A stretch of 64,000 bases of DNA. Origin: Paramoeba atlantica. Taxonomy: Eukaryota; Protista; Discosea. The stretch is taken from positions 124,001 through 188,000 of the forward strand of contig CDRNVI010000067.1 of NCBI GenBank assembly GCA_977017575.1. The letters are read 5' to 3'. The translations under genes and the position numbers were made by a program. Of the stretch, positions 1,698 to 62,405 are shown piece after piece. Each line of letters begins with the position of its first letter. Position 1 is the stretch's first letter. The notes beneath the pieces were generated by a model that worked only from the letters and a program-made list of their open reading frames with translations, had not been told where the DNA came from and did not search any database.

Positions 1698-2770
1698 ATG
1701 GTTCGAATGTTTGCTTTGCTCATACTTTACAACAGTGCGGATAATTCTGCGACTTCAGCTTCGCGTGCTGGAAAAGTGAGGGATATATTTCTTCCTCAGG
1801 AATATGACCTTGCAAAATTTATTTGTGATATTAAGAATCCACATGAGTCATAGAGTACTGCCACACCTGCATGTCAGTGGGATGGAGTGGACTGCAATGA
1901 TGAAGGTGAAGTCATTAGCATTAGGCGGAACAATCGAGGGGTACGGGGAACTTTGCATTGGGAACATTTACCACGATCTCTCACATGGTTAAATATTTCT
2001 GCTAACGAGTTGTGTGGTGCAGTAGATTTTTCAGTATTGCCTCAGGATATATGGAAGATATATGGAAGATAAAGATATAGTTTCTGTACCTTGTTGGTAC
2101 ATTTTCCCTAGTTCGTCCTTTCTTTTCCCGGAAACGGGCATACTCTTAACCTTTTATGTATGTCCGTTTCCGGCTGGTGCTAGGGCCGGAAACTCATCTT
2201 TCCGTTGAAGAGGGGCCGCCGCTTCGCACTCACGTGAAGCGCGTCAGACGCGCCGAATGCCCCCGCTGGATGGACGCCGGGGAGAGCCTCTCAACGACGC
2301 TGCGTAGCCGAAAGGCTTCTTGCAGCCTCTCAACGACGCCCCCCGCCGTGGAAGTCCAGTGCCCCCTTCACCCCCCCAGGCGCTGCAGAACCTCCCTTGA
2401 GGACCACGCGGCGTGGCCATAGGCCGAATCCCTGCGTACGAACGGCGTTGAATGCGCTGTAATGGCCGTTGATAACGGTCGTCGTACGACAGGAAGATGC
2501 TCTGCCGGCTCGCCCGGTATGAACCTGAAATGAAATGGACAGAAATTTGTTTAGCGGAGAATTCGATATGAAAAAGCTCCCCCCATAGTGACTTATCTGG
2601 ATGTATCAGACAATAAGTTTAGTGGCTTAGTTGACCCCTCAAGTCTTTTGCATATGCCTCTAGCAGCTGGTGATTCATACCTTGATATAGTGGACAAATA
2701 TGAATTGAGAGGCGCAGTGTCTAAAAAGTGGATTCTTGATAAGATGTGGTTTGTTCCGGAAGAAGAATAA
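1698..2770 (+). pseudogene. LRR-family pseudogene (nonsense codon plus two retroposon insertions)
   Basis: Reads MVRMF...RAGKVRDIFLPQEYDL...NPHES*STATPACQWDGV...LPQD, then an insertion at 2066-2535. It resumes DRNLFSGEFDMKKLPP...MWFVP, then a SINE inserts at 2760. Confidence 0.9.
2066..2535 (+). mobile_element. SL-exon-headed structured retroposon, copy A
   Basis: 2066-2096 matches SL nt 9-39 (aagataaagatatagtttctgtaccttgttg), followed by GT. Has a 16-bp hairpin and ends cgcccggtatgaacctgaaatgaaa. Near-identical body at 55436 and 61935. Interrupts an LRR frame. Confidence 0.85.
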
Positions 2771-3184
2771 GAAGAAGAAGAAGACACGGAGGGCTCTGCA
2801 GTGCCAACCGTTAAGGTAGAGTCTCAGGTCACCGACCTTCATTGTTTTGCTACCCCCTTCCCAGACGGCACTCGACGCCTTGCGGTCCGAACACGGCTAC
2901 CCAACCGTAGCTACCAGGACAGGTGTCCACCCCGTTGCATCGTGTCTCAAGCCTCATTTGCGTAAGCAACTCGCAATTTAGCGGCTGCGCTGGAGCTGGG
3001 TTCAGCTCGGCGGTTCCGGGTCGCTCCTCCAGGGGAGCGGGGTTGGGTGTGGGCCTTGAAGGTACTCCTGATCGCTTTCCCTTTGTAGTGAGGCCGCCAG
3101 GTTGCGAGTTTTGTCGATAGCGGGAATCGAATCACCAACCTGCAGGTTGTAAGGCCCACCGTCTGCCAACTGCACTCGCACCGC
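2760..3184 (-). mobile_element. tRNA-headed SINE with (TTC)n tail and 13-bp TSD
   Basis: TSD TGGTTTGTTCCGG at 2747-2759 and 3185-3197. Minus strand starts GCGGTGCGAGTGCAGTTGGCAG (A-box-like), has a CTTACAA loop and GATTCGATTCC (B-box-like), and ends tcttcttcttcttcttattcttctt. Confidence 0.8.
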
Positions 3185-3239
3185 TGGTTTGTTCCGGGAT
3201 CCCTCGTTTGCTCCATGAATCCCTGTTTTGTTCCGGAAT

Positions 3240-3464
3240 CCTGGTTGGAATAACTGTTCTAAACCACATTCCCGGTTAACATACCCCCCTGGTATGTTGT
3301 CGAGGTATACAGTCGTTTCAAGATATATCCCCCCCGGAGGAATTTTGAATTTTTTTATCTATTTTTTCTCATTTTCACAGCATTGGATAGATCTCGTTTC
3401 ACTGGTGAAGCGTTTTGCTGCCCTTTTTTCGTATGGACCCCTTGATACCCCTTGGGTCCAAAAA
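3240..3464. mobile_element. Remnant of the same MITE family as 31760-32196 (host of copy D)
   Basis: About 130 bp matches the reverse complement of 31980-32110 (ttctcattttc.cagcattgg.tagatctcgtt...). Confidence 0.65.
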
Positions 3465-4053
3465 TTTGATGTTCATGCGCTCATTGGCGCAGAGATACAG
3501 CCCTGGATGCGACGGCCGATATCATCGGCACATGATTCGTCCACAACGGATTCGCACCAAGGGGCATTCGGCACGGACTCTGTCGGTAGAGGGGATCCAG
3601 GCAACTCGCCCTCTCTTTAAGCAGCCGGAGGGGCGTACTGGAACCGACTCGGTCCCAGTTGGTAGAGGTGGTCCAGGCAACTCACCACCTCTTTAAGCAG
3701 CCGGAGGGGCGCACTGCAACCGACCGCTGCCTCGCGATAAGACGAGGCAGAGCCACTCCCAGTGGTCTTCAAGGGAGGCCACCAGGGCGCATGTCTCCTC
3801 GGGAAGGAAAGGGCGCGAAAGGAAGAAATCCGGGGAGGGAAGTAAACTCGCTCAAAGAGTGAGCCGGGGAGGGGTGATGGGGTGGAAGCCCGTCCCCTAC
3901 TTCGCCGAGAAAGAGGGACAGTTTCGACCTTAGTGCCGGCCGGCAACGGGCATATGAACAGTAAGACTATGCCCGTTGCCGGGGAAAGAAAAGATAAACT
4001 AAAGGAAAAAGTCCCAACAAGGTACAGAAACTGTATCTTTATCTTTAATGGTT
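3465..4053 (-). mobile_element. SL-exon-headed structured retroposon, divergent copy D with a full 39-nt SL exon
   Basis: Minus strand begins AACCATTAAAGATAAAGATACAGTTTCTGTACCTTGTTG (39 nt). It has a perfect 15-bp hairpin co-varying with copy A, an internal ~78-bp tandem module, and a 3' end atgaacatcaaat like copy A. Confidence 0.8.
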
Positions 4054-4318
4054 TTGGACTTCCTTCGATATTTATCAAAAATCAAATTTATCAAAAAAAA
4101 ATATTTATCATAAAAATCTTGTTTTGGCCATTTTTCGGGTCACCATACATATAAATGCATATTAATATATATCATAATTTATGTATGAGCACCAGGGAGT
4201 CCTTGTGAAAAAAAGCGCTTCCCTAGGGGAACGAGATCTCTCGTTTGCAACAAAAAAGAGCAGACGGTAGAGTGCTGAAGAAATAGAACATTTCTTCAAC
4301 TTTCAACTACAACTGTAA

Positions 4319-4365
4319 GCGTATGGTGGGGTATACCCGAGTCATTGTTTACTTCACGCCAATAA
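4319..4365 (+). pseudogene. Orphan 3' end of an LRR paralog (VWWGIPESLFTSRQ*)
   Basis: Matches the last codons of the 4564-5160 gene (gcgtatggtggggtatacc.ga.tcatt). Confidence 0.7.
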
Positions 4366-4367
4366 GT

Positions 4368-4445
4368 GAGGGGCTGCGGGTGAGGCCCAAAACGAGATCA
4401 CGCGAGATCATACGAGATCACGCGAGATCATACTCGCAGCCCCTC
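4368..4445. mobile_element. 78-bp mini-MITE, GAGGGGCTGCG TIR family
   Basis: TIRs gaggggctgcgggt / actcgcagcccctc with internal 10-bp repeats. The paralogous empty site at ~59465 shows AAGT duplicated (or AG, depending on the boundary). Confidence 0.8.
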
Positions 4446-4563
4446 AAGTGTCGGTAATACTACTTACCATTGCACACGGCACGTCTATAGTAGTATACAC
4501 TACAGTGTACTACTAGCCACTTTTTTATCGGCACACTGAATTTTTCTCCCATAAAATTTCACT

Positions 4564-5160
4564 ATGTTCCTTAAAGCTGAAGAGACGGATGTTCCCGTCC
4601 CTTCAAGTTCACGCATTGGAAAGGTAAGGGGAACATTTCTTCCTGTGGAATATGAACTCGCAAAGTTGATTAGTGATGTTGAAAATCCACATGAGTCATG
4701 GAGTACTACCACGCCTGCTTGCGAGTGGGATGGAGTGGACTGCAATGATAAAGGAGAGGTTATAGAAGTTTCGTGGGGTTTTCGGGGGCTACTTGGAACA
4801 TTACATTGGGAACATTTACCGCGGTCTCTCACATCTTTAAGCGTCTATAATAACCAGCTTCGCGGCCCTGTCGATTTTTCCTCATTACCCCGAGGCTTGG
4901 CTCACTTGTGGATAAGTTCAAATGCCTTTAGTGGGGAACTCCATTTCGAACATCTTCCACCAGGGTTAAGGATTCTAAATATATCAAACTGTCACTTCAG
5001 TGGCTTTGTGGACTTTTCGTGTCTTCAGCGTTCGTCGCTTGCAAAAGGCGGTTCAGGCTTTGACATGAGGAATAATCCCGAACTCAAGGGATCGATTTCT
5101 AAACGAGCTGTTCCTAAAGGCGTATGGTGGGGTATACCTGAATCATTTTTTACGGACTAA
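4564..5160 (+). CDS. LRR-family protein, 198 aa, intact
   Basis: N-cap TPACEWDGVDC..GEV, then W.HLP and LxxLxLxxNxxSG repeats. Confidence 0.9.
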   Translation: MFLKAEETDVPVPSSSRIGKVRGTFLPVEYELAKLISDVENPHESWSTTTPACEWDGVDCNDKGEVIEVSWGFRGLLGTLHWEHLPRSLTSLSVYNNQLRGPVDFSSLPRGLAHLWISSNAFSGELHFEHLPPGLRILNISNCHFSGFVDFSCLQRSSLAKGGSGFDMRNNPELKGSISKRAVPKGVWWGIPESFFTD

Positions 5161-5942
5161 GTGCCTGAATAGTTCTCTGTTGCTCTTACGTTTTCTGTGC
5201 ACTATTTCTGGAAAGGAAAAGTAAACCTGTCAAGAGGCAGGAACAAGACGAAATGTCAGTAACACATGAAATTTGTTTCTTTTTAAATGGGGTTCTTTAG
5301 GAGCTTTCTTGAGCCCAAACCATATTTTTGCATGAGAATTGCTAATCCCTGACCGGTCTACTGATCAGGGTCTCCACATCAACCACTGCCTGTCTCGAAA
5401 CGTTTCTATGTATTTTTTACATAAATTATCACAAATTATATTGTCGTTTTTCAATCTCAAAGGCTGAATGAACTCATTCAAGTTTCTGAAATTGGGCGGA
5501 TGTGTATATTTTTTGTTATCAATCCACCGAATTCCTAAATTTAGACGACAGTGGTGATCAGCGTCTTTTACCCCCCCTACAGGTCTTGTATTTTGTCCGA
5601 TTTTGGAAATATTTGGTATACATATTTGGTACCTGCACACACCTGCACACACCTGTACCACCGTTTTTCGACCCAATCGTTTCAAATTCGAGGTCCTTTT
5701 CACTCGAGCGACCCCCTACCCCCCTAGCCAAGTAGGGGTCGAAAAAGCTAATTATAACTTTTTCGGGTGTACTTTTTCGAATGTTTGGGATGAACAGTAG
5801 TAAAGTAAGTCAGAGGGCTGAAACCTGGAAGACCCTGTCACTTACCAGGGGGATCGGTCGGGATCGGTCGGGATCGGCGCTTGAGTAGCTTCTTAAGATA
5901 CTGTATTTTTTACTACTTTGACCTTTTTTCTACCACTTTTTA

Positions 5943-8279
5943 CACTGCCGCCAAAAATTATTGAATTTTTAATTGGTGTCGAAACCGGACAACTTTTAAT
6001 TTAAAATTTAATAATTTTTGTGCCAATAATTTTTGTAGAAATGTGTACATGCGCAAATCTTGGGCTGTGGGAAATTAAGCGCCCGTCGTAGTGTTTTCAC
6101 GTTCTTATTGACTACCGTGGGTTGGCGGGTTGCTCGTCTCATGGCCTTCGTCAGGTGGAGTGAAATGGTGCGAGGGTGCATTCCAACAGAGAATTTATCA
6201 TTGTACTCTTATTGGTAGATAAAAGCAATGCATGTATTAAAACAATGCAGCTAATGTTGCGTACAAAGGTGAATAGCAAAAAAGAGCGCGCGTTAAAATA
6301 TTTCATTTTAATATCTAGTGCGGGGAAAAAGTGTAGACCGATAGAACAAAACATGGAAAAAACCCCACAAAATATCAGCATAAAATCTGAGTAAATGCTA
6401 TTGCGCACTTTCACAATTCAATACCATCAGAAAATTCAATACAATCAAAAATATTTTGGAGGTGCTCATCAAAGGGGGAGTCACAGCAACTAAACTTTAG
6501 GACCGATTCCGTACGATGAGAGAGGAGTAAACGTCAGACTCTGAGCGGATTTATAGAGCTCCTTTTGTCTTCGCGTCATTCCACGAAGTCGCTGGCGTAG
6601 ATTCGTGATATCTTCAGCCTCTCGTCTCTGGAGTTCCAGTTCTTCAGTTGAGAGTACCTTACGAGGTCGGCCGCGTTTTCGCTTTTCTCCAGGTGCGCTT
6701 CTTTCGATTGTGGCGCTTGCTGTCGAATTTTCGTTCTCTTCTATTATATTGATGTCCCCTTCTGCGTTCCCAATGGATGAGGTGTTAATTTCGTCGGAAC
6801 CTTCATCATCCAAGAAAATCGCACCACTAGACGTATGTAAATGAGTTTGCAAATGCTTGTAGACATCGAGACGTGACGGTCGGTTTTTTTTGCTGCCAAA
6901 TAACACCACTGGAATTTCGGTTAATCTGAGCTTGGGGAAGTTCTTGCATAGCCTGCACAATGTACGACACTTTTTTCTCTCGGCAAAGTGTTCGCGATGT
7001 GCAAATAACGTTGGAGATGGCTGAATTGAGGTCGGAACGCGCAAAGATGCGGGATACATCATCGCTGTAGAGCTGAATAGCGCGTTGTTTTAGGCCAGAG
7101 ATTACAAACTGATCTGCAGGTTGAAAGACATGCGTCATTTTCTTGGGAATACGAACTACGTCGCAAGAAGAACCAAGGAGAATCTCATCAGTACCACTAT
7201 GCTGAGTGGCTTCATCAATAATCAAAAGGGCGGGGGCAGCGGGCTTCTTCATAGCTTCACGTTCGGAGGCAAGTATCTCCTTAAAGCGACTCAAAAAAGT
7301 TGCCCACGTCGAGGCGTCTTGAAAATGAGAACCTTTCCGGGCACATGTAGAACACATGGGTCGCTACCAACATTGACGAATACGCGACTCGTTCCCTGGA
7401 ATATGAACTGTAACATTTTGATTTCTCCAGCTGCAGATGAAAGAACGTTGCGAGTGAAACCCTGCTTTTCACGACGAACTGAAATTTTGCGGGACTCGCC
7501 TGGATTAATGCGTTCCCAGGTCCAAGTGGCATTTGCTTGTCCTAATCCCAGACACACAAAGAATTCGTCTGTGTTAAACACAAGCTCTTTTTCACAACGA
7601 TTTTTATAGCTTTCAAGCTGTGAAAAGAATGTTTTAGATGCCTCAACAACTTCATTCGGCGTAACAGTTCGATCGCTAGTAGCGTGGCGGACACGAATGT
7701 TATTTTGCTTCATCCAGTCCTTTGCCCATGATAGCGAAAACTTCAGAGGACCCCCCTTTAGGGATGTGGATTTCGGGGAAGATTGCTCTTTGATACCGCG
7801 GGCCACACTAGCTACAAGAGCCGCGTACACTGGGACAGCTTGCTCCCTCATTTTATCGAAAGCTTGAAGGACAAGTGAAGATTCCTTTCCCGTAAGTAGG
7901 CCACGCCGGCCGCGACTACCGATGTTTTCTAGCGAGCGCATGCCCTTATATTGCGAAACGCAAGCAGCCGAAATTACTCGTCCAAATTGATCCAAAAATC
8001 TCTCCATAACTAGTGCATTTTTACATGCACCTCGAGTGTTGTCAAAAAGCCATTCGCGCTCGTCCGGCGCTAAATCTTTCGAGGACGGCTGACTTTTCTT
8101 CGTCTGATGGATCGAATTCGCTACCAAAAAATGCTGAGCAATGTCCTGGTTGACCATCTCGAGCGGTTGACAAAAAATAAATAATAAATAAAACGCAGGC
8201 AAAAAACGACCATTTTTAATTAAAAATTCAATAATTTTTGTACCATGAATATTAGCGACAATAAAATTTGACTGGGGTG
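5943..8279 (-). mobile_element. pogo-like (Tc5/CENP-B HTH + DDE_1) transposon, frameshifted
   Basis: ORF 7291-8202 has FSLSWAKDWM and VFNTDE; ORF 6827-7357 has LLIIDEATQH and THVFQPAD; AT-hook KRGRPRK at ~6660. A perfect 23-bp inverted repeat lies at 5952/8218, with TA flanks. Outer ends are approximate. Confidence 0.75.
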
Positions 8280-8291
8280 TATTCTTTTTTA

Positions 8292-8386
8292 GGCTTTTCG
8301 TTAAACGTAGTGGTTGTTTTCAACTTAGATGACAGCACTGCTGCGCGCTTCGCCTTGAAAACTACTGCCGCGTTTAACGAAGAGCC
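8292..8386. mobile_element. Short foldback/MITE (ggcttttcgttaaacg / cgtttaacgaagagcc)
   Basis: Imperfect ~35-bp inverted repeats flanked by TA. The same right end recurs at ~50370-50405. Confidence 0.6.
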
Positions 8387-8534
8387 TAAAAAAATTGGAG
8401 AACGATACTAAAACGACAATGATCGTATCTACAACTTTGCTCGTATCAACTTTGCTTGTTAAGTTTAGTACTTTGCTTGTTAAACAGAACAGTATGGGCT
8501 TTTAGAGTGGGGAAAGTCCTTCAACAAAGTACTT

Positions 8535-9070
8535 TCAACAATTCAATCCCTGAATGTATTGCATCACGCAATTCCCCCCTATTTTGGGACATTTAGTGTT
8601 TTTGTGTGATTCAATTTGTCCCCAAATATTTTCGATGGGGTTGAGATCAGGAGACTTAGGGGGCCAAGCTAACATTGTGACACTATTTTCTTCAAAATGG
8701 TGAGGGGTCAAAATCATGAGGGGCCCACTCCGACAGCTCGCGGCACAGCCCAATTCGTTTCTTCTTGTGGGCAGTCGCGAGAGCTGGATGACGGGGGACA
8801 GTGCGCAAAATGAAGCTTTCACGCTTTAAAGTGCGCGTGATAGAGCGCCGGGTACAATAAAACCCTTCGGACTGACACGAGGTTCGACCATGACGGAATT
8901 CCATAAGGCAAATCTCGCGTACCTTCATCAATGATGGTTGTAGCTCGGGTTATTATTATTATCCACGTCTCCTGTCTCCTCGTATCGCTGAATCCAACAC
9001 TTCGCAGTGTTCTCGTGACAACCTGCTTCGCGTGCGTCAGAGGTTTTACCAATTGGATGAACTTCTTCAA
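8535..9070 (-). pseudogene. Tc1/mariner (DDE_3) transposase remnant
   Basis: Contains WPPKSPDLNPIENIWGQIE; frameshifted pieces upstream. Confidence 0.85.
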
Positions 9071-9995
9071 CCCCTCAAAAGGCGTTAGTCGGATAGGAAA
9101 ATGATCTGAGCAGGGGTCAAAGTCACAGAGGACGTACTTTAAATCAAAGAACGCTCAGCTAAAGCAAAAGAATCAGACGACAAAGGATACACGCAGCAGA
9201 GATTTGCACTCAAGTCCAAAAGAGCGAAAGAGGAGAAACAAAAATATAGAGGAAATAATACAAAAATACCCCCTATAATTATAGGGGCTTTCTATTTAAT
9301 ACTAAATGTGTGTTTAGTTTCTCCTACCTATGAACATTGTTTCTCCTATGAACATTGCTTTTAATTTCTAACAATTGAAAAAAGAAATTGAATGAGTTTC
9401 CGTAAAAAAGTGGTCGCTATTTCTTTCGCCGAATTTCTAGAACTCGCGTTTTCACCAAGTCTTTTCTTCCACGTAAATTCAACCAGGACCGGTGGGATCG
9501 GCCGGGATCGGCCGGGATCGTAAATCTCTAGTTTCAGCCCTCTCAGAAGACGCGGAAAAGGAGTGCAAAGTAATCTCTAGGATTTAGTCATATGCCCTTT
9601 GGCCTCCTTGACCAAGAGTAAGCGCTTACGATTGTCCCGGAAGATATTCTTAAACGTTTCCGGTTGAATTAAAAAAAAGCGAAAAATTTCAATGATGGAC
9701 CCGGGGTTAAGTTTATGAAGTTTTGCGACTGCCTTATAGGACTTAAGTCGCTCGTATAAGTGCCGTGCGCATCTCGGGGCGCACGAGAGAGGAAGGTAAA
9801 CACAAGAGGCGGTGCTTCTTCGTCATGAATCACCAAAAATGTATCGCTTTTTTGAAAAGACCATATTTTTGCATGAGAATTGCTAATCCCTGACCGGTCT
9901 ACTGATCAGGGTTTCAACATCAACCACTTTGCCTGCCGCGAAAGTTCAAAAATCTTCAGAAAATACACTCCAAATTAGGCCGTAAGAACAATTTC

Positions 9996-10397
9996 TTAGC
10001 AAAAAAGATTTAAATCCGAAAACACTCTCACTAAAGGAATACTTTTACGCTTTCGTATGCTTCCGTTGCACTTCTCTGTTACAGCACGGAGGCGTTCCTT
10101 TCGATTTTCTTCAATTCTTCCCAAACTCCCCCCTTCGCATACGAGCCTTTTCTTAACCATGAAGTTCGTACCCTCAACAGTGTTCGTATGAACACCATCT
10201 TCCGTCACCCACTCGTCTTTATGAACTCCAAAGGGATCATTTTTGGTGGAAGGGAAAATGGACCCCCTTGGCTTCAAAAATAACTTCTTCATGTTTTTGG
10301 TCGAGAATGGGTCATAGGGAGGATTAACTCTTTTTTCAATGAACGAGGGCAGAGCGGAAGTTATAGCCACTGTAATCGGAAAATATTGCATTACCAT
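9996..10397 (-). pseudogene. Merlin/ISXO2(IS1595)-like transposase C-terminal remnant
   Basis: WVTEDGVHTNTVEG matches the HTNxIE motif; homologous to 48830-49400. Confidence 0.7.
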
Positions 10398-10478
10398 GTA
10401 TACTCTTTTAAATCCTTTTCTAGGGGTTTTCTTTTTGAGAAAATATTAACTCCTTCGACCGCTTTTAATTGACGCCCT

Positions 10479-13013: not shown

Positions 13014-13322
13014 AGAAAAAGGGGAGGGCGTCTAAAAAATAAGAAGTCATAATTTTTTTTAGTATAAAGGTTGTAAAAAAAATCGGTAGTGTTTCCTCAT
13101 GAAAAAGAAAACGCGGACTTTGGTAAACGAAAAGCTCTTGCGCGAAATGAAATGTACGCGACAATCGGGAGGTATACTTGTGTAGCTACTGTATCATGTG
13201 GTACGTACAAAGGTGAAGCCTATTCTTTTAGTATTGATAGTTGGCTTTTTTTGCAAGACTTAGATAGCCACATACAGAGACACCTTTTGTTTATTCCGAT
13301 TTCTTTTTGCCACCTGACAAAA

Positions 13323-32337: not shown

Positions 32338-32871
32338 TTGTCATTTTCATAGCGGGCGAACCTGCGCAAACGCACGCAAAAGAGGATACAGGACTGCACT
32401 CACCCTAGTTCTTTAGCACCTTATTATGTTGGTGTCGGCTGGTCCAGCCATCAGTTCTCCGAATCAGTCTCACCCTAGTTGTTTGACGTCTTGTTATATT
32501 GACGTCGGGCTATGTATTGACGTCGAGAGTTAGCTCGGGAAGCTGGGGCCGCTAAGCCCCATCATCCGACGTGAGTCGGACGCCAAGATTGAAATAATAC
32601 AGGCATGAGTACCGCCTGTTTGCTGGGATAGTTCGACGGTGTCGAGTCTCAGCTTCAACGGACCAAGACTTCTTGGGTGTTATACCCTCGAGCGGACTTG
32701 GCTCCTCAGCTTCAACAGACAACAGGCTTAGCCAACATATTCCAGACCTCTTCGAAACGATACAAAGTCGCTGGATTCATCCATTTTCGAACTTCGTCAG
32801 GATCTATTCGGGGAATGTCATGCTTTATACGCAATGATCAAAAGTTTCGAAGAGAAGTCAACAAGGTACAG
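32338..32871 (-). mobile_element. SL-headed retroposon relative, copy E (different body)
   Basis: Minus strand starts CTGTACCTTGTTG (SL nt 27-39) and ends tcgcccgctatgaaaatga, matching the 3' end of copies A/B. Many short hairpins. Confidence 0.55.
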
Positions 32872-51622: not shown

Positions 51623-52052
51623 GGGAGTTGTGGTGCCGTTTGTTAGCCACTGAAACATGTAAGTAATGTTAGTGCAGGAATCTGTGACCGAAGCATTTTT
51701 TGTATGAAATGTACACGAAGTACAGTTCTCTGTTGTGCGGGAGCTCGCAAAGAAAGATTGGTACGTGATCTCAAGAGTGTCCAGCTCAAGAAAGAAAAGT
51801 GGAACACTGCGGGATACTTCATCTCTTACGTTGAAGCAGCAAAATGAGCTTTCATTTTAAATGATGGAGAAAAAAGTTCGGGTAGGACCCAATGAAAATG
51901 TATCTAAAAAAAAAATCTAAAAAATCTTTCCCTTTTCTTTGAGCGTGAAAATTTGCATTAGCCCAGTAAAGCACGAACGAAATTGATTCTACAACGAAAA
52001 TCGAGGGTGCTGCATTCATTGAACCCTTTTGATGGTAATTGAATTATTGACG

Positions 52053-52123
52053 TTTAGACTGGAAAGTTGACGTGCACTACATGAGTTAAATTCATGTACT
52101 GCACGTCAACATTCCAGTCTAAA
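52053..52123. repeat. Near-perfect 71-nt foldback
   Basis: 33-bp arms with two mismatches plus one G/T pair, and a 5-nt loop. Confidence 0.9.
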
Positions 52124-52474
52124 ATGTTCGTTCGCGAGACAAAGTGATAGAAGTGCCTTTACTATTTTTCCGAAGGAAGAAGGGAAGACCAAGATTTCCC
52201 TACAGACCTTGATATGGATTATGCCACGATTCTAGAAAGAAATTCATGTAAGTTTAGCTGTGGTTTTCTTTTCGTGGGTTTCATCACTATAAGACGACAT
52301 TTTGGTGTAGGGTGTCCCGCAGAGATTCGACATTATTATTATACAAGTCAATACATGTATATGTAAATATACAGTCGAGGCTTGTCCGAGTCTTAAGAAC
52401 CACCTCTAAGTTTTCTACTCAGAAGATATGAGTTAGATTAATATCCCACTCAGTCCGATGCTGTTCTTCTTTGC

Positions 52475-53680: not shown

Positions 53681-53967
53681 TGGAACAAAGTAAAGTTTTT
53701 ACAGAAACGCCTTTAATCGAAAACAATTTATTGGTTGATCGCGTACATCGACCTCTTTCTAACACACAAAATGCTATTCGAGCGTTCCGTCAACTTATTC
53801 GTGATGCCCACCATAACTTTTTCGACATTGTTACTTCAACTGTCATTCAAGCTGCAAGCGATCTTCCGTTCAATCTTGTTGCCTACTACCTCGCAAAGCA
53901 CACATTAAACCAAGCTCGGGGGTTACAAGGCATCGAAGTATCGAAAAATGGACAGTGCAGGTCGTGA
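53680..53967 (+). CDS. Possible 95-aa protein overlapping the upstream stop (TAATG), with a weak Dpy-30/RIIa-like helix pair
   Basis: VTSTVIQAASDLPFNLVAYYLAKH loosely resembles that motif; the ATG shares its A with the upstream TAA. Confidence 0.35.
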   Translation: MEQSKVFTETPLIENNLLVDRVHRPLSNTQNAIRAFRQLIRDAHHNFFDIVTSTVIQAASDLPFNLVAYYLAKHTLNQARGLQGIEVSKNGQCRS

Positions 53968-55317
53968 AACTCTTACATGACGAACTCTTACATAATCGTA
54001 TTCGTCGTTACATGTCGATTGTATTCGTCGTTGCATGATTGTTGTCGTTGAACTCTTACATGATTGTATTCGTAATCTGGGTCGGTATACGACAGAATTT
54101 CGATTCAAAAGCGAACCGTATTTTGAGTAGAGTGTATGACGTATTTGATATGCCCCAAGAACAACACCACACAGTGGAGGGGTGATTGCGGAAGCGAGGC
54201 AACTAAAGACCTTTTTATTGGTTTTGTGATAGAAGAACGAAATTTGTAGCCAGTCTTCCAACAAACTACTAGCACTTCTAGTTACTATGGTGCTAAAAAA
54301 TAAGGGAGTTAGTGCTGTCTGAAAGATGGTAGTGCTAGTTAAGACCGCGAGGAGGTCTCAACCAAACTTCCTTATGCTGAGTGTGTCAGGCTTCATTGAG
54401 ACGCGTTTTACAGAGCAAGCGTACTTACAGAGCTCTTACAGAGAAAGCATGCTTTGTGTCCGAATCGGAAAGCTCACGGTCTAACACTCTTTGACACATC
54501 ATTTCCGATAGTAGAGCTTTGCCAACAGGTGTTCCAAAGTAATTCAGCTCGGTTATTGTGGCGCGTAGGAGTCTGTAGGAGTCCATCGTAGTGCGGTAGT
54601 ATACTCAGTACGTGGTTGTTCCCATGGGAGTGAAGTGGAAAGTAGCTTCTGTAATGGCTGTTCAACTTGACGTACAATATGTACTACATTACTATTTCGG
54701 TGTGATAATACTGTCCCCTCTTTATTTAATAGTCCGCCGATTTTGGACATTTGAACTCTTAAGTGGGGAGTCAGAATTTTCGGGACTCTCAAGTAGGCTG
54801 GTGAATATTTTTTCATGGATCTGGAAATAACGCCAGCGTTTCAACATGGCCATTCCATGTTTATTTCTCTGTATGTTTCCTAAAGTTGTTGGGCGCGCTG
54901 GGGAGGCTGGCGTCGGGGGTGGCTGGGTGAGGGGCTGGGCGGGAGGGGGTGGTAAGGGAGGCTTGGCGTCGTGGGTAGCTGGACGGGTTGGGTGGTGGTG
55001 ACTCAAACGAGAACATTTACTCATGAGTAGAAAAGACATTAGACTAATAATATACCCTGGACGGTAATAGGTGGTATTTACCACATGCGTGGTAATAGGT
55101 GTAATTACCACTTTTCTATTACCCAATTACTGTGACAGAACGTGGGGTGAAATTTACATTCAGGAAAAAACCATATGTTTACAGAAACATTTACTTTGAA
55201 GGAAACTGGACGGTGCCAACGTCTTCCCACCACTTGCACACCGAGGTATGCAACAAAGTTTCCAGTGAAAAACTCCACTCTTCCTCTGTAATGTGAAAAA
55301 GAGGTTGACTGCTTTGA

Positions 55318-57478
55318 ACAAGATCGTTAACAACTTCGACAGTGATAATTGGCCGTTCTTCCACGCGGATATGTCAACTTGACAATATATGTTTCGGAGA
55401 AAAACTCATTACAGTTTCTTCTTTCAGTAAGATGCAGTTTCTGTACCTTGTTGGTACATTTTCCCTAGTTCATCCTTTCTTTTCCCGGAAACCGGCATAC
55501 TCTTAACCTTTTATGTATGTCCGTTTCCGGCTGGCGCTAGGACCGGAAACTCATCTTTCCGTTGAAGAGGGGCCGCCGCTTCTCACCCACGTGCAGCGCC
55601 GTCAGACGCGCCGAATGCCCCCGCTGGATGGACGCCGGGGAGAGCCTCTCAACGACGCAGCGTAGCCGAAAGGCTTCTTGCAGCCTCTCAACGACGCCCC
55701 CCGCAGTGGAAGTCCAGTGCCCCCTTCACCCCCCATGCGCTGCAGAACCTCCCTTGAGGACCACGCGGCGTGGCCATAGGCCGAATCCCTGCGTACGACC
55801 GGCGTTGAATGCGCTGTAGATGCCGATTTTAAGCGTATTATACGTGGGACCTCATGAGTATGTTTCGCCTCCCATATATTCACCCAAACATCAGGCCTTT
55901 GATGGCAAAACAATGGCCGACACTCTAAGGAGTTGCCTTCAAATCAATCTCGGCGACCACAGGGCCGTAAAGCTCACGTACCTTATGGTCGACGGGAGCG
56001 CAGTGAACCAAGTTGCGCGACAGCACGCCGAAGGTCATTTAAGAAAATTTTATGATCGTATTCATCCGGTACCGGAAAGAGATCTCCAGAATTTTCAAGA
56101 GCACTTGCTATTGGGATTTCCAGGAATATCGCTTCTATCATGCATCGGACACATGTTAAACAACGTGTGTAAAACGTCTCTCGAGTCGTACGAGGATACT
56201 CCGGTATTCGAATTCAAGAAACACTTTGCACGAGCATTTTTCTCTGGGGGTAAAGCAAGTGCTATGAAGGGCAAATACAAAGGTCAAGTACTGGATACTC
56301 TTTTGGGGAAATTTGATGAGAAAGTCGTTATTGCTGAGTCGACTCTCAAACAGTGCTACCGTGGACTCGGCGAAAATTCTCCAACTCGTTACAAGGAAGC
56401 TTTAGAGATTAAAATTTGTGAAAGCTTGACTGCGCTGGAAAAAGTAATCCCGCTCGACTCCTGCTCACTTCTTTGCCGTTTAAAAGCTTCGAACTTAAGC
56501 TGGACAGATAAACATAACATCTTATTGGAGATCCCGATCATTGTTTCCGCTCTCCGTGACGCAGGGGCACGAAGAGCTGTGTCAACCCCAAAGCTTGGAG
56601 GTGTCACGCGGTGGTGTGAAGACAAATTTACGTGTATGTCTTTTTTATACACTGATCTGGATTACGTGGCTGCATTCATTTTCAGTGAAATTGCCAAGCG
56701 ACGTCACGTTAGCGCATCTATTCGTCGATGTCACCAACTCCTCCTGGAGCATGGTGCGGAAGCCCTGAAGTGCCAAAGCCGAGAATTTCTCGACAAAAGT
56801 AATGTACTTCATCTTGCACTCCGAAAATTTTCTGATATGATGCATAAGCCCATGGCGACGCAAGTTGCGCAAACGTTGGAGTTATATGAGCACGCTTGTT
56901 CTGGTGAAGGTCCCGATGGACTTGACATTGCAATGCGGCACCATATGCGCCGTCTCAACAAAAACCACAACATGGATTTCTGGAAGGACGTTGTGTGGTT
57001 TCGTCCTGCGTTCATTCTACAGTATGCGCGGCCGTGTGGACTGCAACCGATTTCTCTCGCTCGTGCAAACAACTTGTTTGATGAAAATGCTGGTACACCT
57101 AAGGCTCTTCGACCATTATTCAATATCTCAGAACAAGAGTGGGAGGAATGGGGATCTTGCGTTGCCTTTCGCTGGAATCCAGAGATTCACGAAGACGAAG
57201 ATGTTTGGTGGCTAGAAATAGGCAGCGAGATGTTTCCTGCTATATTTCGAGCTGCTATGCACTACATTTGGACGCCACCTCTGGTTACCAAGTGTGACAG
57301 TTGGCTTTCGATTCTATCGTACATGTATAATTCTAGGCAAACTCGCACGTCGCCCCAAGTGGTGGCCAACCGGATATTCATTCGCGGCAACCAGGAGAAG
57401 CTTGAATATTTGATACCGGGAGGTGATGAAGAAAGTGATACGGATGAGTCAGTTGACATTACAGACAATGAAGGTTGA
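55318..57478 (+). pseudogene. hAT-superfamily transposase split by SL-headed copy C
   Basis: Removing the insert and one AGATGC restores CQLDNICFGEKLITVSSFSK-MPIL. Downstream motifs: LMVDGSAVN, SCIGHMLNNVCK (CxxH) and hATC-like WW...FPAIFRAA...P...D.W.S...R. The frame is closed by TGA at 55315. Confidence 0.85.
55436..55817 (+). mobile_element. SL-headed retroposon copy C, 6-bp TSD AGATGC, 3'-shortened
   Basis: AGATGC at 55430-55435 and 55818-55823; AGTTTCTGTACCTTGTTG|GT; body nearly identical to copy A. Confidence 0.88.
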
Positions 57479-57909
57479 GCATAACGCTGTGTGTAACATA
57501 TGAATTGCAAGCTCTACATCTATTCTACATCTACACGTATATCGAATAAAATTTACCAATCATCGGGGTTATGTTTTTCACCGGCTATAATCTTTTTTTT
57601 CAAAAACAATGTTTTTCAAAAGCATATTTCCAGTTCAGCTTTTACATTGGGTTTTTTTTCCATCGTTACATATCGTAGGCCTTGTTTTTCCCCTTCGTTA
57701 GCGTAATTTATCTAATTTTGTTTACATATGGTTTCTGCTCTGAGCATTAGTTTACGAGAAATATATGAGACAATACGGTATGCTTCTTACGTCATTATGG
57801 ATAGTTTATTTTATTATATTATACTATATTATTCGATAGTTTATTTTATTATACGAATGTACGAATATTTTATCGTTACGATTCCTACCTCCAACCATTC
57901 AAAATATTC

Positions 57910-58873
57910 CAGGGTTCGCAGAAACTATAAAACTATCAATATAGTACTATATAGTTACTATAAACCTTTTTCGAAAACTATAAAAAACTATATTTTTTTG
58001 TTTCACATTTTAGGCACTCCGAAGCTCACCAACACGCCATAAATACACGGCGAATTCATTTGTGTACGATTTTTCTTATTTTTAAACCCGAAAATTGATG
58101 CCCGAAATTAAAGTTACGAGGGGTAGTTTCTGCAAAGATTATTTTATTGAACTGCTGCACACGGAGGGAAGTAAACAAGCGGTTGAATGTAACTTGTGTC
58201 AGGAAGGGACGTACCCCAGTCCCATCGCGTGGCCTTGACAGATTGCCTTGTGCGAATCTTGCGTCCCGAACATCTTCTCACTGCATCGCTGTCGCCGCGC
58301 GTTGGCTGGAGCCACCGACGTTATGTCTTGGGACTGAATAACTGCTGCTCACAATTCTATGAGTTTGAATAAATACAATCATATGAGTCTGAATAAATTA
58401 CGCGGTGTGTTGTCGAGTGGAGAGTTTGCACTTCCTTTCACTCGTTTCGCGTGCGTTTCATTGCGAGGGAGGTTCTAAAAGCACCTTTAAACCACCACAA
58501 AAATAGGATGATATCTCCCGGTGTGTAAAGGATTCCGACGTGCCAAAAGAATCTTTAAGGGACATACCCTTCCATTTTTATAGTGGTTTAAAGGTGCTTT
58601 TAGAACCTCCCTCGTCTACTTTAGCTTGGGTTACATTTTTTTCAGAATTTCTTGTCATATCATACGTATGTAAGCGTGTAAGAACGCATGTAGAGGCGTG
58701 TGTATGTCCTTCACAAGCGGAGAGGACTCAAAAAATATCACTTGTAAAGTGAAAAAAACTTTATAGTTTTCTTATAGTTTTATAGTAAAATATAGTAAAT
58801 ATAGTACTATATAGTAACTATATTGAATGAAAAAAAACTATATTTTACTATATTATAGTTTCTGCGAACCCTG
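57910..58873. mobile_element. Non-autonomous hAT element, 964 bp, perfect 8-bp TSD
   Basis: AAATATTC|cagggttcgcagaaactata ... tatagtttctgcgaaccctg|AAATATTC. Confidence 0.93.
58465..58613. mobile_element. Nested 149-bp MITE (gagggaggttctaaaagcacctttaaaccac TIRs)
   Basis: 31-bp perfect inverted repeats. Confidence 0.8.
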
Positions 58874-59359
58874 AAATATTCAACAAATTGGCACACCTTG
58901 TGCAAAATTTTTTCTTTCTGCACAATACTATACATCGTCGTACCCTCTTTATCACTATACCACTTTCCTAACTTCCGCTTTAGATTTCTACGAACTTTAA
59001 ATTAAATTTCAGATGAGTGCTATGTAGATCGACATAATTTTAGAGAAAATATCCTCTTGCATCCAACCGGGTCCCAAATGGCTTCCAATGCTCTTGAGTG
59101 CCTTTAAAGTACCTGAGTTCTCCTGCTTGGTTGATGACTAAAAAATGACGGTTGAGGGAAGTGTAAGTTTCTTGGATGGAAGTATAAGGGGAGTCCTGAT
59201 TCATTGTCTGGAATGAAAATGTAGGTATAAAGGGAGGGATCATCCTCTGAAATATAAAAGGGGGTGACAGTACTATCCAAATTCTTCTGGTATGGCAAGA
59301 TATTTTTCTAGCTCCCGTATTTTGTGCTCCGGGTAACACCGAGTACCATGCGTACAGTA

Positions 59360-59427
59360 CGCGAGTACGGTACTCGGGTACTCAAGGCCCTAGGTACTCA
59401 TTTGAGTACCTGAGTACCGTACTCGCG
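59360..59427. repeat. 68-nt foldback of gagtac-rich repeats
   Basis: 26-bp arms cgcgagtacggtactc(g/a)ggtactcaa. Confidence 0.8.
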
Positions 59428-59517
59428 AATGTATGTATATCTGAGCCATTGTTTACTTCACACCAATAAGTGTACGTAATACTACTTACCATTCCACACT
59501 GTACGTCTATGGTAGTC

Positions 59518-59619
59518 CTCTGACCCCCCCTTTATTTTCGCGTTTCGGATTCTCATTTCATCCCCCCTTTAATAGAGACGAAGGACGAAATTTTGCCTAC
59601 ATTAAAGGGCGGGTCACAG
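59518..59619. mobile_element. 102-bp mini-MITE (ct(c/g)tgaccc...ctttaat TIRs)
   Basis: Imperfect TIRs; absent at the paralogous site ~4495-4520. Confidence 0.6.
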
Positions 59620-59661
59620 TTTTTTTATCAACACACTGAATTTTTTCCATAAAATTTCACT

Positions 59662-60225
59662 ATGTTCCTTAAAGCTGAAGAGACGGATGTTCCCGTGCCT
59701 TCATGTTCACGCATAGGAAAGGTAAGGGGAACTTTTCTTCCTGTGGAATATGAACTCGAAAAGTTTATCAATGATGTTGAAAATCCACATGAGTCATGGA
59801 GTACTGCCACACCTGCATGTGAGTGGGATGGAGTGAAATGCAACGATAAGGGTGATGTGATACGCATTTCTTGGGATGGCCGAAAACTGCGTGGGATATT
59901 GCGTTGGGAACATTTGCCGCGGTTTCTCACGGCCTTGAGTGTCTGTAATAACCAGCTTCGCGGTCCTATCGATTTTTCCTCATTACCAGAAGGCTTGACT
60001 CACTTGTGGATAAGTTTGAATGCCTTTAGTGGGGAACTACATTTCGAACATCTTCCACCAGGGTTAAAAATTCTAAATATATCAAGCTGTCACTTCAGTG
60101 GCTTTGTGGACTTTTCGTGTCTTCAGCGTTCGTTGCTTGCAAAAGGCGGTTCAGGCTTTGACATGAGGAATAATCCCGAACTCAAGGGATCGATTTCTAG
60201 ACGAGCTGTTCCTAAAGGCGTATAG
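59662..60225 (+). CDS. LRR-family protein, close paralog of 4564-5160, lacking the last 11 aa (TGG>TAG)
   Basis: The frame continues WDIPESFFTD* to 60258 after the TAG; mosaic central patch. Confidence 0.85.
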   Translation: MFLKAEETDVPVPSCSRIGKVRGTFLPVEYELEKFINDVENPHESWSTATPACEWDGVKCNDKGDVIRISWDGRKLRGILRWEHLPRFLTALSVCNNQLRGPIDFSSLPEGLTHLWISLNAFSGELHFEHLPPGLKILNISSCHFSGFVDFSCLQRSLLAKGGSGFDMRNNPELKGSISRRAVPKGV

Positions 60226-60423
60226 TGGGATATACCCGAGTCATTTTTTACGGACTAAGTGCCTGAATAGTTCTCTGTTGCTCTTACGTTTTCTGTGCAC
60301 TATTTCTGGAAAGGAAAAGTAAACCCGTCATGAGGCGGGAACAAGACGCAATGTCAGTAACTCATGAGAACGGATTTTTTATTAAATCGAGTTCTTTAGG
60401 AGCTTTCTTTAGCCTAAAGCATA

Positions 60424-61364
60424 CAGGGGTGCGAATCTAAAGGTGGGGCGGGTCTAAAATTCGTAAAAGTTGTCCAATTTTGGAAAATAATAGCGCATTG
60501 GATAGCTCTCACAGAGTTGTATGTTTTAGGACAGGTAGCTTCCGGGGTTTGGGGGGTACCCCCCTTTCATGTAAGGGTCAAAAACACATATTGCAATACT
60601 TTAGTGGTGTCAATAATTTCTGTAATTTGGATTGCAAAAGACAATTAGTAACCACAGTGCCCCCCGTTCCGACTAGTAACAATTTCACAACGCTTCCTGA
60701 AACTCTTCAACGTTTTCTGAACCGTTGCAGAGTGGGTCTGTTTCAATTTAAGGAAAGACCCCTCAATAGCGGCTTCCAGTTGCTGTCGATTTCGGGGTCG
60801 AAGAAGATTTTTGTCTGTGTCCATCACAGACCAGAAGATCGCTCCAGCTCTCTACGCCGTAAACAAGGTTATACCCCTCGTCGACAAGCTTAAGAGCCAC
60901 ATCCAGGAACGCAGGGGTAACCACCGTCGAAACACGCTCTCGGGATGCCGTTAACACGTCACCCGTAAGGGTAAAACGTTCAACCCAACGTTTTACAGTG
61001 TTCTCATGAACACCAAAGTGCTGTGCCGTAGCGGAGTACGATCCTGTGCGCTCGTATTCCGCCACCAAAAGCATGCGGTGGCTCTCTTTGACGGGGGCGG
61101 GGGAAGAATACGATCTATCGCTCAGTACTCCACGGGAAGTCCTCGAGCGAGCGCGCTTTTGGGGCATTTTCTAGTAAAAAATGTAATTTCTGCAAGGGAA
61201 AAAAGCGAAATATGGTATCAAAAAATATGTACGTTAAAATCGCAGGATTTTAATGCACCTAAAACACACAACTCTGTGAGAGCTATCCAATGCGCTATTA
61301 TTTTCCAAAATTCGACAACTTTTACGAATTTTAGACCCCCCCCACCTTTAGACCCGCACCCCTG
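60424..61364 (-). mobile_element. Internally deleted Tc1/mariner element, 941 bp, ~110-bp TIRs, TA TSD
   Basis: TA|caggggtgcg...cgcacccctg|TA. Has an HTH remnant (TAQHFGVHENTVKRW) and C-terminus (KSFRKRCEIVTSRNGGHCGY). The empty site is visible at ~5330. Confidence 0.93.
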
Positions 61365-61591
61365 TATGTTTGCATGAGAATTACTAATCCCTGAGACCGG
61401 TCTACTGATCAGAGTCTCAACATCAACCACTGCCTGCCGCGAAACGTTTCCATGTATTTTTTACATAAATTATCACAAATTGTATTGTCGTTTTTCAATC
61501 CCAAATGTTGTATAAACTCATTCAAGTTTCTGAAATTGGGCGGATGTGTATATTTTTTGTTATCAATCCACTGAATTCCTAAATTTGGAAT

Positions 61592-62405
61592 ATGTTCCTT
61601 AAAAGTGAAGCCACGTATGTTCCTATGTCTTCAGTTTCACGGATTGAAAAGGTAAGGGGCATACATTTGTCACAAGAATATGAGCTCGCAAAGTTTACAA
61701 GAGATGTTGAAAATCCACACGAGTAATGGAGTACTGCTACACCTGCATGTCAGTGGGATGGAGTGAAATGTAATGACTTGAGTTACATGTATGTTCATTG
61801 CTTGGTATGGTCGAAAACTGCGTGAGATATTGCATTGGGAACATTTACCACGATCCGTAAAACGCCTGAATGTTTGCAACAATGCGCTGAGTGGCACTGT
61901 GAATTTTTCTTCATTACCTCGAGGTTTGGAGAGATTGTTGGTACCATGTTGGCAGAACGTGGTCCCTATTGCATCCTTTCTTTTCCCGGAAACCGGCATA
62001 CTCTTAACCTTTTATGTCCGTTTCCGGCTGGCGCTAGGACACGAAACTCATCCTTCCGTTGAAGAGGGGCCGCCGCTTCTCACCCATGTGCAGCGCCGTC
62101 AGACGCGCCGAATGCCCCCGCTGGATGGACGCCGGGGAGAGCCTCTCAACGACGCTGTGCAGCCGAAAGGCTTCTTGCAGCCTCTCAACGACGCCCCCGG
62201 CAGTGGAAGTCCAGTGCCCCCTTCACCCCCCATGCGCTGCAGCACCTCCCTTGAGGACCACGCGGCGTGGCCATAGGCCGAATCCCTGCTTACGACCGGC
62301 GTTGAATGCGCTGTAATGGCCGTTGATAATGGTCGCCGTACGACGGCAAAATGCTCTGTCGGCTCGCCCGGTATGAAAGTGAAACTGAAAGATTTCCAAT
62401 AATGC
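61592..62405 (+). pseudogene. LRR pseudogene (TAA, frameshift, SL-headed insertion)
   Basis: MFLKSEATYV...ENPHE*WSTATPACQW...LPRGLERL, then the insert; resumes KISNNA. Confidence 0.85.
61935..62390 (+). mobile_element. SL-headed retroposon copy B (diverged head)
   Basis: Head tggtaccatgttg aligns with SL ctgtaccttgttg; body nearly identical to copies A/C; ends cgcccggtatgaaagtgaaactgaaa. Confidence 0.85.

What the first reader, a model, noticed from the sequence alone, without database searches (positions are those of the whole stretch)
2066..62390. Family of dispersed retroposons that begin with the spliced-leader exon (candidate SL-RNA-headed SINEs)
Seen: five insertions (A 2066-2535+, C 55436-55817+, B 61935-62390+, D 3465-4053-, E 32338-32871-) start with all or part of AACCATTAAAGATAAAGATACAGTTTCTGTACCTTGTTG. 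In D it is exactly 39 nt. The heads are variably 5'-truncated; A, B and E end with (t)cgcccg.tatgaa..tga and D ends with a diverged version. They interrupt coding frames, and C has a 6-bp TSD. Established (recalled, should be verified): kinetoplastid and diplonemid SL exons are 39 nt, start AAC and end TTG, and nt 17-32 GATACAGTTTCTGTAC match the T. cruzi SL in register. Known SINE heads derive from tRNA, 7SL, 5S, U snRNA or 28S. Inference: these are non-autonomous retroelements headed by SL RNA. They could be (i) SL-RNA-derived SINEs, (ii) deletion derivatives of a SLACS/CZAR/CRE-type element transcribed from the SL +1 that escaped the SL array, or (iii) retrocopies of trans-spliced RNAs.
Basis: partly seen in the sequence, partly recalled or inferred. 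Interest (0 to 1): 0.92.

Follow-up and report, generated by a model that had tools for sequence, protein, structure and literature searches.

The report
Retroposons headed by the spliced-leader exon
Short non-coding jumping elements of a kinetoplastid-type protist begin with a DNA copy of the cell's spliced-leader mini-exon, most likely because they and the R2-like elements that copy them are reverse-transcribed from trans-spliced RNA, not because they descend from the spliced-leader RNA gene.

Summary
All five insertions carry spliced-leader (SL) exon sequence at their 5' end. A, B and C belong to one about 465-nt family. D belongs to a young about 578-nt family. E is a one-off mosaic.

The true SL RNA genes lie in 5S-linked tandem arrays. 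Their exon is AACTTTAACG...CCTTGTTG, followed by the classic intron start GTATGAGAAGC.

Genome-wide, about 190 or more copies in at least five subfamilies share the same plan:
- a head made of SL nt ~11-38, then GTAC, a pyrimidine tract ending in AG, and a hairpin;
- a variable body;
- a tail made of CTCT, a covarying stem-loop, and ATGA.

RT-CCHC-RLE (R2-superfamily) LINEs carry the same tail and are also SL-headed, with SL followed by an ordinary 5' UTR and ATG. In four subfamilies, 21 or more copies have the SL joined exactly after the element's internal AG. That is the signature of trans-splicing.

No copy carries SL intron beyond GTA. None sits behind the SL gene promoter. There are no target-site duplications (TSDs) and no terminal inverted repeats (TIRs).

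Reading (i) is not supported.

Unexplained: copies made by this machinery start at SL nt 10-13, which is the CRE/SLACS cut site. The scan found the same phenomenon before on other DNA of this genome.

The parts
2068..2535 (+). Copy A. Full-length member of subfamily S5 (~465 nt), inserted in an LRR gene.
   Evidence: 98% identical to a copy on contig C11. The flanks encode LRR protein.
2068..2096 (+). Head of A: SL exon nt 10-38, with one mismatch.
   Evidence: compared with the SL RNA gene exon.
2097..2111 (+). GTAC plus a pyrimidine tract ending in AG. This is the stretch missing from the short-form copies, so it marks an internal trans-splice acceptor.
   Evidence: GTAC pairs with SL nt 28-32 in all 16 aligned copies.
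2128..2173 (+). 14-bp head hairpin conserved across subfamilies.
   Evidence: one A-U to C-G compensatory pair in 6 of 16 sequences, plus G-U changes.
2500..2535 (+). Tail of A: CTCT, stem GCCGG/CCGGT, ATGAA, then TGAAA repeats.
3465..4053 (-). Copy D. An old (91-92% to consensus) member of the young subfamily S1 (~578 nt). It is one of the few copies with a full-length SL head.
4015..4053 (-). It has 3 differences from the true exon and is followed by GGAC instead of GTAC.
3465..3494 (-). Tail of D: CTCT, stem GCGC/GCGC, ATGAACATCAAA.
32338..32871 (-). Copy E. A unique mosaic retrocopy made of SL nt 26-38, pieces of other repeats, and a degenerate tail. Just upstream of its SL head (towards higher window coordinates) lies a repeat that ends in oligo-T and recurs at other loci.
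55429..55817 (+). Copy C. Subfamily S5, head from SL nt 14. It is 3'-truncated with no tail and ends 2 nt before the ATG of a 552-aa ORF.
61935..62391 (+). Copy B. Subfamily S5, 90% identical to A. The head is reduced to TTGTTG plus GTAC followed by diverged sequence. The tail is intact. It sits at the same LRR position as A.

Best explanation
These are SINE-like, non-coding retroposons, plus one mosaic retrocopy (E).

They are copied by R2-superfamily LINEs (RT, CCHC zinc knuckle, restriction-like endonuclease). These LINEs recognise a 3' tail made of CTCT, a short stem-loop and ATGA, and they integrate without target-site duplications.

The SL sequence at the front is a DNA copy of the SL exon that trans-splicing puts on the template RNA. 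It is not a piece of the SL RNA gene.

Shown:
- the family structure;
- the LINE partners with the same tail;
- SL heads on the LINEs;
- use of the internal AG acceptor;
- the absence of intron, promoter, TSDs and TIRs.

Inferred:
- the main form (SL-GTAC...) also began as a trans-spliced RNA and is now inherited with the element;
- this reverse-transcription and integration machinery usually ends its copies at SL nt 10-13, whatever follows the leader.
For: 1. True SL RNA genes: about 40 units in 5S-linked tandem arrays, with the exon followed by GTATGAGAAGC.
2. About 237 hits to SL 3' part plus GGTA, minus about 41 SL genes, leaves about 190 SINE heads. There are five subfamilies, with copies 97-99% alike within S1 and S2.
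3. The tail motif is shared by the SINEs and by 11 LINE 3' ends, with 8 or more different but complementary stems. The S4 SINE tail is the same as the tail of the LINE in L092.
4. The LINE ORF has RVT_1, zf-RVT (CCHC) and a PD..E..K region. There is a weak R2 protein match in the PDB, and R2-type best named relatives.
5. Six LINE 5' ends have SL followed by different 5' UTRs and ATG. They start at SL nt 11, 11, 12, 13, 7 and 23.
6. Short-form SINEs: 17 copies with SL|TTCATC or SL|TTAATC, 4 with SL|CCCTTCC, plus copies in L071 and L092. In each, the junction lies exactly behind that subfamily's own AG.
7. A ~930-nt element with the A-type tail starts at SL nt 4, followed by a UTR and ATG.
8. 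Putative RNA contigs cover the SL and then run into unrelated pyrimidine-rich sequence, as expected of a leader.
Against: - The four bases after the exon (GTAC) resemble the intron start (GTAT) and keep the hairpin that spans the donor site.
- No SL-less progenitor of the form AG|GTAC... was found for S1. The main-form head is therefore inherited, and its first acquisition was not observed.
- The SL+GTAC module is 96% identical between subfamilies, against 75% for the next 75 nt. This points to a function that simple relic status does not explain.
- The putative RNA contigs show no SINE body, so transcription and the RNA 5' ends are untested.
The four long-headed copies could not be read, and the counts are lower bounds.
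Confidence: 0.68

Rival explanations
1. The head descends from the SL RNA gene or its primary transcript (exon plus the first 3-4 intron bases). This could happen as in SLACS/CRE elements, which are co-transcribed from an interrupted SL gene, or by a template switch onto SL RNA. The elements would later have escaped the arrays.
For: - GTAC in the SINE against GTAT in the gene, with the exon/GT hairpin kept in all 16 aligned copies.
- Copies start at SL nt 10-13, the position (11/12) where CZAR and SLACS insert (PMC5814959).
- CRE elements make TSDs downstream of the first nick (PMC3636483).
- No AG-preceded progenitor was found.
Against: - No homology beyond GTA. A real SL-RNA retro-pseudogene keeps the intron.
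- No copy lies behind the SL promoter-proximal sequence.
- The partner LINEs carry SL followed by non-GTA UTRs. Other families also start GT after the SL, so GTA may be chance.
- The best named relatives are R2-type, not SLACS/CRE.
Confidence: 0.15
2. The SL 3' part (nt 11-38) plus GTAC is a functional SINE head in its own right. It would act as an internal promoter, a start-site determinant or a protein-binding module, so that SINE RNA begins at nt ~11 and is not trans-spliced in the normal cycle.
For: - The 5' ends are uniform: 27 of 33 events lie at nt 10-13.
- The module is 96% conserved between subfamilies, against 75% next to it.
- All 24 exact young S1 heads keep SL-GTAC.
Against: - LINEs with unrelated UTRs and freshly re-spliced short-form SINEs show the same nt 10-13 start. 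The boundary therefore follows the SL, not the SINE.
- About 4 copies reach nt 4 or further, and about 9 reach nt 6-9.
- No Rfam family matches the head and no pol III boxes were seen.
- No internal promoter is known in the SL exon (own knowledge).
Confidence: 0.12
3. The elements are not mobile. They would be segmental duplicates or gene-conversion tracts of one SL-containing sequence.
For: A and B lie at the same position of two LRR paralogs. Contig C185 duplicates the window's copies.
Against: - About 190 copies lie on dozens of contigs with unrelated flanks.
- Sharp common 5' and 3' ends.
- A and B are 90% alike, while their flanks share only a 26-nt match.
- C185 is an allelic contig.
Confidence: 0.02

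Closest known systems
SL-tagged retrogenes of dinoflagellates (DinoSL relics; PMC5585692, PMC6050394)
   Same: A trans-spliced leader, normally added only at the RNA level, is written into the genome at the 5' end of reverse-transcribed copies. Repeated rounds leave variant junctions.
   Different: Here the tagged sequences are retrotransposons and a high-copy non-coding SINE family with its own LINE-type tail, not host genes. The leader is the kinetoplastid type and is usually cut back to nt 11-38.
LINE/SINE pairs that share a 3' tail (for example ingi/RIME and L1Tc/NARTc in trypanosomes, and stringent-type LINE-SINE pairs in general; PMC5814959, own knowledge)
   Same: A short non-autonomous element with the same 3' recognition structure as an autonomous LINE. 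There are subfamilies and young copies.
   Different: The partner is an RLE (R2-superfamily) LINE, not an APE LINE. The head is not the Pr77 signature or a pol III small RNA but the SL exon. There are no TSDs.
CRE clade (SLACS, CZAR, CRE1/2): SL-gene-specific RLE LINEs (PMC12278014, PMC5814959)
   Same: They are RLE LINEs of kinetoplastids that are physically linked to SL sequence. Position 11/12 of the SL is their landmark.
   Different: CRE elements sit inside SL RNA genes, end in poly(A) and make TSDs. The elements here are dispersed: one lineage sits in (TG)n, and others sit in genes or next to other tails. They carry the SL as their own 5' end, have a stem-loop tail and make no TSDs. Clade membership was not shown.
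R2 elements and their non-autonomous SIDE partners (own knowledge; R2 end-to-end template jumping)
   Same: RT-CCHC-RLE architecture, a structured 3' UTR as recognition signal, tandem or chimeric copies consistent with template jumping, and no regular TSD.
   Different: R2 is rDNA-specific and defines its 5' end with an HDV-like ribozyme. No ribozyme family matched here, and the 5' end is SL sequence.

Membership tests
SINE (classical definition) | Short, non-coding, high-copy, dispersed, with subfamilies. | tested here: met
   About 190 heads on many contigs, elements of 460-615 nt, five subfamilies, copies 97-99% alike.
SINE (classical definition) | 3' end shared with a partner LINE. | tested here: met
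   The CTCT, stem-loop, ATGA tail is found in the SINEs and in 11 RLE-LINE 3' ends. The S4 tail is the same as the tail of the LINE in L092.
SINE (classical definition) | Head derived from a pol III small RNA (tRNA, 7SL, 5S) with an internal promoter. | tested here: not met
   No Rfam or tRNA match to the head. The head is SL exon plus non-SL sequence.
SL RNA gene or SL-RNA-derived head | Exon followed by the SL intron (GTATGAGAAGC..., stem-loops). | tested here: not met
   Only GTA is shared. The genes and a retro-pseudogene keep the intron.
SL RNA gene or SL-RNA-derived head | Upstream SL promoter context or tandem 5S-linked array. | tested here: not met
   No hit for promoter-proximal sequence plus SL plus GTACATTTT. 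The flanks are unrelated.
Retrocopy of trans-spliced RNA | SL exon joined to downstream sequence exactly at an AG acceptor. | tested here: met
   Short forms in four subfamilies join the SL right behind their own AG: 21 copies, plus copies in L071 and L092. For the main form the acceptor is not recoverable.
Retrocopy of trans-spliced RNA | The SL is the organism's mRNA leader. | tested here: inconclusive
   The gene structure is classic. Putative RNA contigs carry the SL next to unrelated sequence, but the run's RNA label is a guess.
R2 superfamily (RLE LINE) as partner | Single ORF with RT, then a CCHC motif, then a PD-(D/E)XK endonuclease. | tested here: met
   RVT_1 and zf-RVT hits. C-x2-C-x7-H-x4-C, then RPD...E..K, read in the translation. 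Weak R2 match in the PDB.
CRE clade (SLACS/CZAR/CRE) | Insertion inside SL RNA genes between nt 11 and 12, with TSD and a poly(A) tail. | tested here: not met
   The copies are dispersed and have no TSD. They have a stem-loop tail. One lineage sits in (TG)n.
CRE clade (SLACS/CZAR/CRE) | RT phylogeny places the element within CRE. | not tested
   Named top hits are R2-type arthropod elements. No SLACS/CRE name appears among 120 listed hits. No tree was built.

The most novel reading that the evidence does not exclude
This R2-like machinery treats the SL exon as a cis signal.

Whatever SL-capped RNA it copies (LINE, SINE, re-spliced SINE), the integrated copy begins at SL nt 10-13. That is the same position at which CRE, SLACS and CZAR cut SL genes.

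The elements would then be descendants of SL-gene-specific elements. They would no longer target the SL in DNA but use, or trim, the SL on their own RNA or cDNA. The SINEs would keep SL nt 11-38 plus GTAC under selection for that step.
Probability: 0.2. Interest if true: 0.85.

Novelty: new variant of a known kind. Interest (0 to 1): 0.66.

Why it matters
In kinetoplastids the SL is known in DNA only in SL RNA genes, and CRE-type elements are known as parasites of those genes.

Here the relation is turned around. Whole LINE and SINE families carry the leader as their own 5' end. This shows that their transposition intermediates are processed like host mRNAs.

It gives a built-in tag for dating and counting retroposition events in a free-living relative of trypanosomes. 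It gives a natural record of which acceptor sites are used. The sharp nt 10-13 boundary also suggests a testable link between SL recognition by RLE elements and 5'-end formation.

I found no paper describing SL-headed SINEs in Euglenozoa in the searched library. That is not proof that none exists.

Tried and rejected
- Rfam, at gathering threshold on the window and at E<=1 on four loci, found only 5S rRNA in the SL repeat. No SL, HDV-like ribozyme or small-RNA family matched the head. ARAGORN found no tRNA.
- TSD search: negative. Empty paralogous sites for the five insertions: none found.
- SL-less progenitor (AG before GTAC...) for S1: none; all 24 hits carry the SL.
- Master copy behind the SL promoter: none.
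- More E copies with a longer SL: none.
- The literal SL sequence in papers: no hit. Aksoy 1990 (PMC330328) is not held, so the SLACS TSD details rest on reviews.
- Read laying: the putative RNA run covers only the SL part, so there is no evidence for or against SINE transcription.
The four long-headed copies, the 7.3-kb SL units on C74 and most LINE 5' ends of G000 could not be read. I used ENA contigs of the same or a near-identical organism instead.
- A tblastn against phages was a wasted call.
- Pfam on the poly(A)-preceded, full-SL elements gave no class.
- A preference for inserting next to other tails is real but minor: 3 of 31 heads, against about 0.3 expected.
Full report
**What is in the window.** The SL 3' part occurs three times in the window with up to 3 mismatches, against none in 100 shuffles. 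Reading the five sites confirms SL-derived 5' ends.
- A (2068-2535, +) starts at SL nt 10/11.
- C (55429-55817, +) starts at nt 14 and is 3'-truncated.
- B (61935-62391, +) keeps only TTGTTG plus GTAC before a diverged stretch.
- D (3465-4053, -) has a 39-nt leader-like head.
- E (32338-32871, -) starts at nt 26.

A and B interrupt two LRR paralogs at the same position. C ends 2 nt before the ATG of a 552-aa ORF.

**The real spliced leader.** A genome search for the SL 3' part followed by GGTA found tandem units. In these, the exon AACTTTAACG...CCTTGTTG is followed by GTATGAGAAGC, the classic kinetoplastid intron start (own knowledge). The units are about 1.45-2.9 kb, carry a 5S rRNA gene on the other strand and number about 40 (C97, C107, C74, C3, C11 and others).

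It differs from the true exon by two substitutions and one extra base.

A dispersed SL-RNA retro-pseudogene (L045) shows what a copy of SL RNA itself looks like: exon from nt 3, the whole intron, then an A-rich end.

**The family.** The SL 3' part plus GGTA gives 237 hits. About 41 of these are SL genes, which leaves about 190 SINE heads as a lower bound. All-against-all comparison and consensus building give five subfamilies:
- S1, ~578 nt, which includes D;
- S2, ~612 nt;
- S3, ~560 nt;
- S4, ~575 nt;
- S5, ~465 nt, which includes A, B and C.

S1 and S2 copies are 97-99% alike, so they were active recently. D is 91-92% identical to the S1 consensus.

All subfamilies share the same head: SL nt ~11-38, GTAC, a pyrimidine tract ending in AG, and a 14-bp hairpin with one compensatory A-U/C-G exchange. 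The bodies differ.

E is unique as a whole and is a mosaic of pieces present at other loci.

**Tail and partner.** Every subfamily ends in CTCT, a 4-6 bp stem-loop and ATGA(A/T), followed by a short A-rich or repeat end. The stems differ but stay complementary. Examples are GCGC/GCGC, GCACT/AGTGC, GCCGG/CCGGT and GCAGG/CCTGC.

The same motif ends LINE copies in L071, L054, L059, L067, L063, L091, L092, L094, L096 and L097. These add further covarying stems, such as AGTGAT/ATCACT, ACAGT/ACTGT and GCTATT/AATAGT. The tail of the LINE in L092 is that of SINE S4.

The LINE ORF carries these features:
- RVT_1;
- a zf-RVT CCHC motif;
- a readable C-x2-C-x7-H-x4-C followed by RPD...E..K;
- a weak match to the R2 protein structure 9nl2.

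Its best named relatives are R2-type elements of arthropods. No SLACS/CRE name appeared among the 120 listed hits. I therefore call it an R2-superfamily RLE LINE of unresolved clade.

Integration leaves no TSD. One LINE lineage, and an S1 SINE, sit in (TG)n.

A minority of heads directly follow another element's tail: 3 of 31 against about 0.3 expected. Tandem pairs are seen in L071, L046 and L095. This fits the end-to-end template jumping known for the R2 reverse transcriptase (own knowledge).

**Where the leader comes from.** Four lines of evidence point to trans-splicing.
1. Six partner LINE 5' ends have the SL followed by four or more unrelated pyrimidine-rich 5' UTRs and an ATG.
2. A ~930-nt element with the A-type tail starts at SL nt 4, followed by a UTR and ATG.
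3. In four SINE subfamilies there are copies in which the SL is joined directly to the base behind that subfamily's own internal AG:
   - SL|TTCATCC (S5-type);
   - SL|TTAATCC (S4);
   - SL|TTCATCT (S1);
   - SL|CCCTTCC (S2/S3).

   There are 21 such copies in the genome, plus copies in L071 and L092. The missing 14-17 nt run from GT to AG. They are too short for a cis intron (own knowledge) and are best read as a new SL added at the downstream acceptor.
4. Putative RNA contigs carry the SL next to unrelated sequence.

Against a descent from the SL RNA gene:
- no intron sequence beyond GTA;
- no copy behind the SL promoter;
- no small-RNA family in the head.

**What remains open.** The main form cannot be re-spliced at its SL/GTAC junction, because the preceding dinucleotide is TG. 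No AG-preceded progenitor of S1 exists in the assembly. Its head is therefore now inherited.

GTAC resembles the intron's GTAT and keeps the hairpin across the donor site. Other SL-headed families also begin GT after the leader, so this may be chance.

The SL+GTAC module is 96% identical between subfamilies, against 75% for the next 75 nt. This suggests a function.

Most striking is the 5' boundary. In 33 SINE insertion events the head starts at nt 10-13 in 27. Only about 4 copies reach nt 4 or further, and about 9 reach nt 6-9. The same boundary is seen in four of six LINE 5' ends with unrelated UTRs and in freshly re-spliced short forms.

By contrast, other retroelement families, often preceded by poly(A), keep the leader to nt 1-3. 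There are 148 such hits, and they vary at the second base.

The boundary therefore follows the SL and this particular machinery. It coincides with the nt 11/12 insertion site of CZAR and SLACS (PMC5814959). Whether that is a relic of SL recognition, a reverse-transcription stop or a start site cannot be decided without RNA 5' ends.

**Verdict.** The finding is real and is more than chance. Option (i) is not supported, and option (ii) only weakly.

Earlier notes of this scan on other pieces of the same genome reached a similar reading. I tested their main claims here on independent loci.

Noticed in passing
window 2807-3200 (-); also L092:8200-8400: A very high-copy repeat whose core reads like a tRNA (acceptor and T-arm-like GGTTCGATTCCC). 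ARAGORN calls no gene. The depth in the DNA runs is 10-100 times that of the flanks. It is probably a tRNA-derived SINE. It lies between A and D.
   Followed up: partly
window 2066 and 61935: A and B sit at the same codon-level position of two LRR paralogs (after ...FS.LP...). A and B are 90% alike, but the flanks share only a 26-nt match. This suggests independent hits on one target motif, or gene conversion.
   Followed up: partly
G000 genome-wide; L003-L030: Other retroelement families keep a complete SL. They are often directly preceded by the poly(A) end of another copy. The second SL base varies (AAA, AAT, AAC, AAG, GAC before CTTT). This may reflect copying through the modified cap nucleotides, untemplated bases at template jumps, or SL gene variants.
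   Followed up: no
L045 (G000:C6:27086, -): A dispersed copy of the whole SL RNA (exon from nt 3, the intron, then an A-rich end). It looks like a retro-pseudogene of SL RNA itself.
   Followed up: no
L094:5706 and L007:1510: One LINE lineage carries a second partial leader (TACCTTGTTG) directly behind its SL. L019 has CTTGTTG repeated. These are either relics of earlier SL additions or slippage at the 5' end.
   Followed up: no
L054:1400-1500; L097:5800-5950 and 10638: A LINE lineage with tail stem AGTGAT/ATCACT is flanked by (TG)n at both ends. It looks like a microsatellite-specific RLE element (Dong-like behaviour).
   Followed up: partly
G000:C74:104160-121527: SL RNA gene spacing jumps from about 2.7 kb to 7.3 kb twice. 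This would fit ~4.7-kb insertions in the SL/5S repeat.
   Followed up: no
window 55818-57478: The truncated copy C ends 2 nt before the ATG of a 552-aa ORF with no Pfam match. The element may supply that gene's upstream region.
   Followed up: no
L050/L051 (G000:C11:1-7900): An S1-type SINE lies antisense in the spacer of the SL/5S repeat. These units also hold a second, slightly mutated SL gene copy 297 nt downstream of the first.
   Followed up: no
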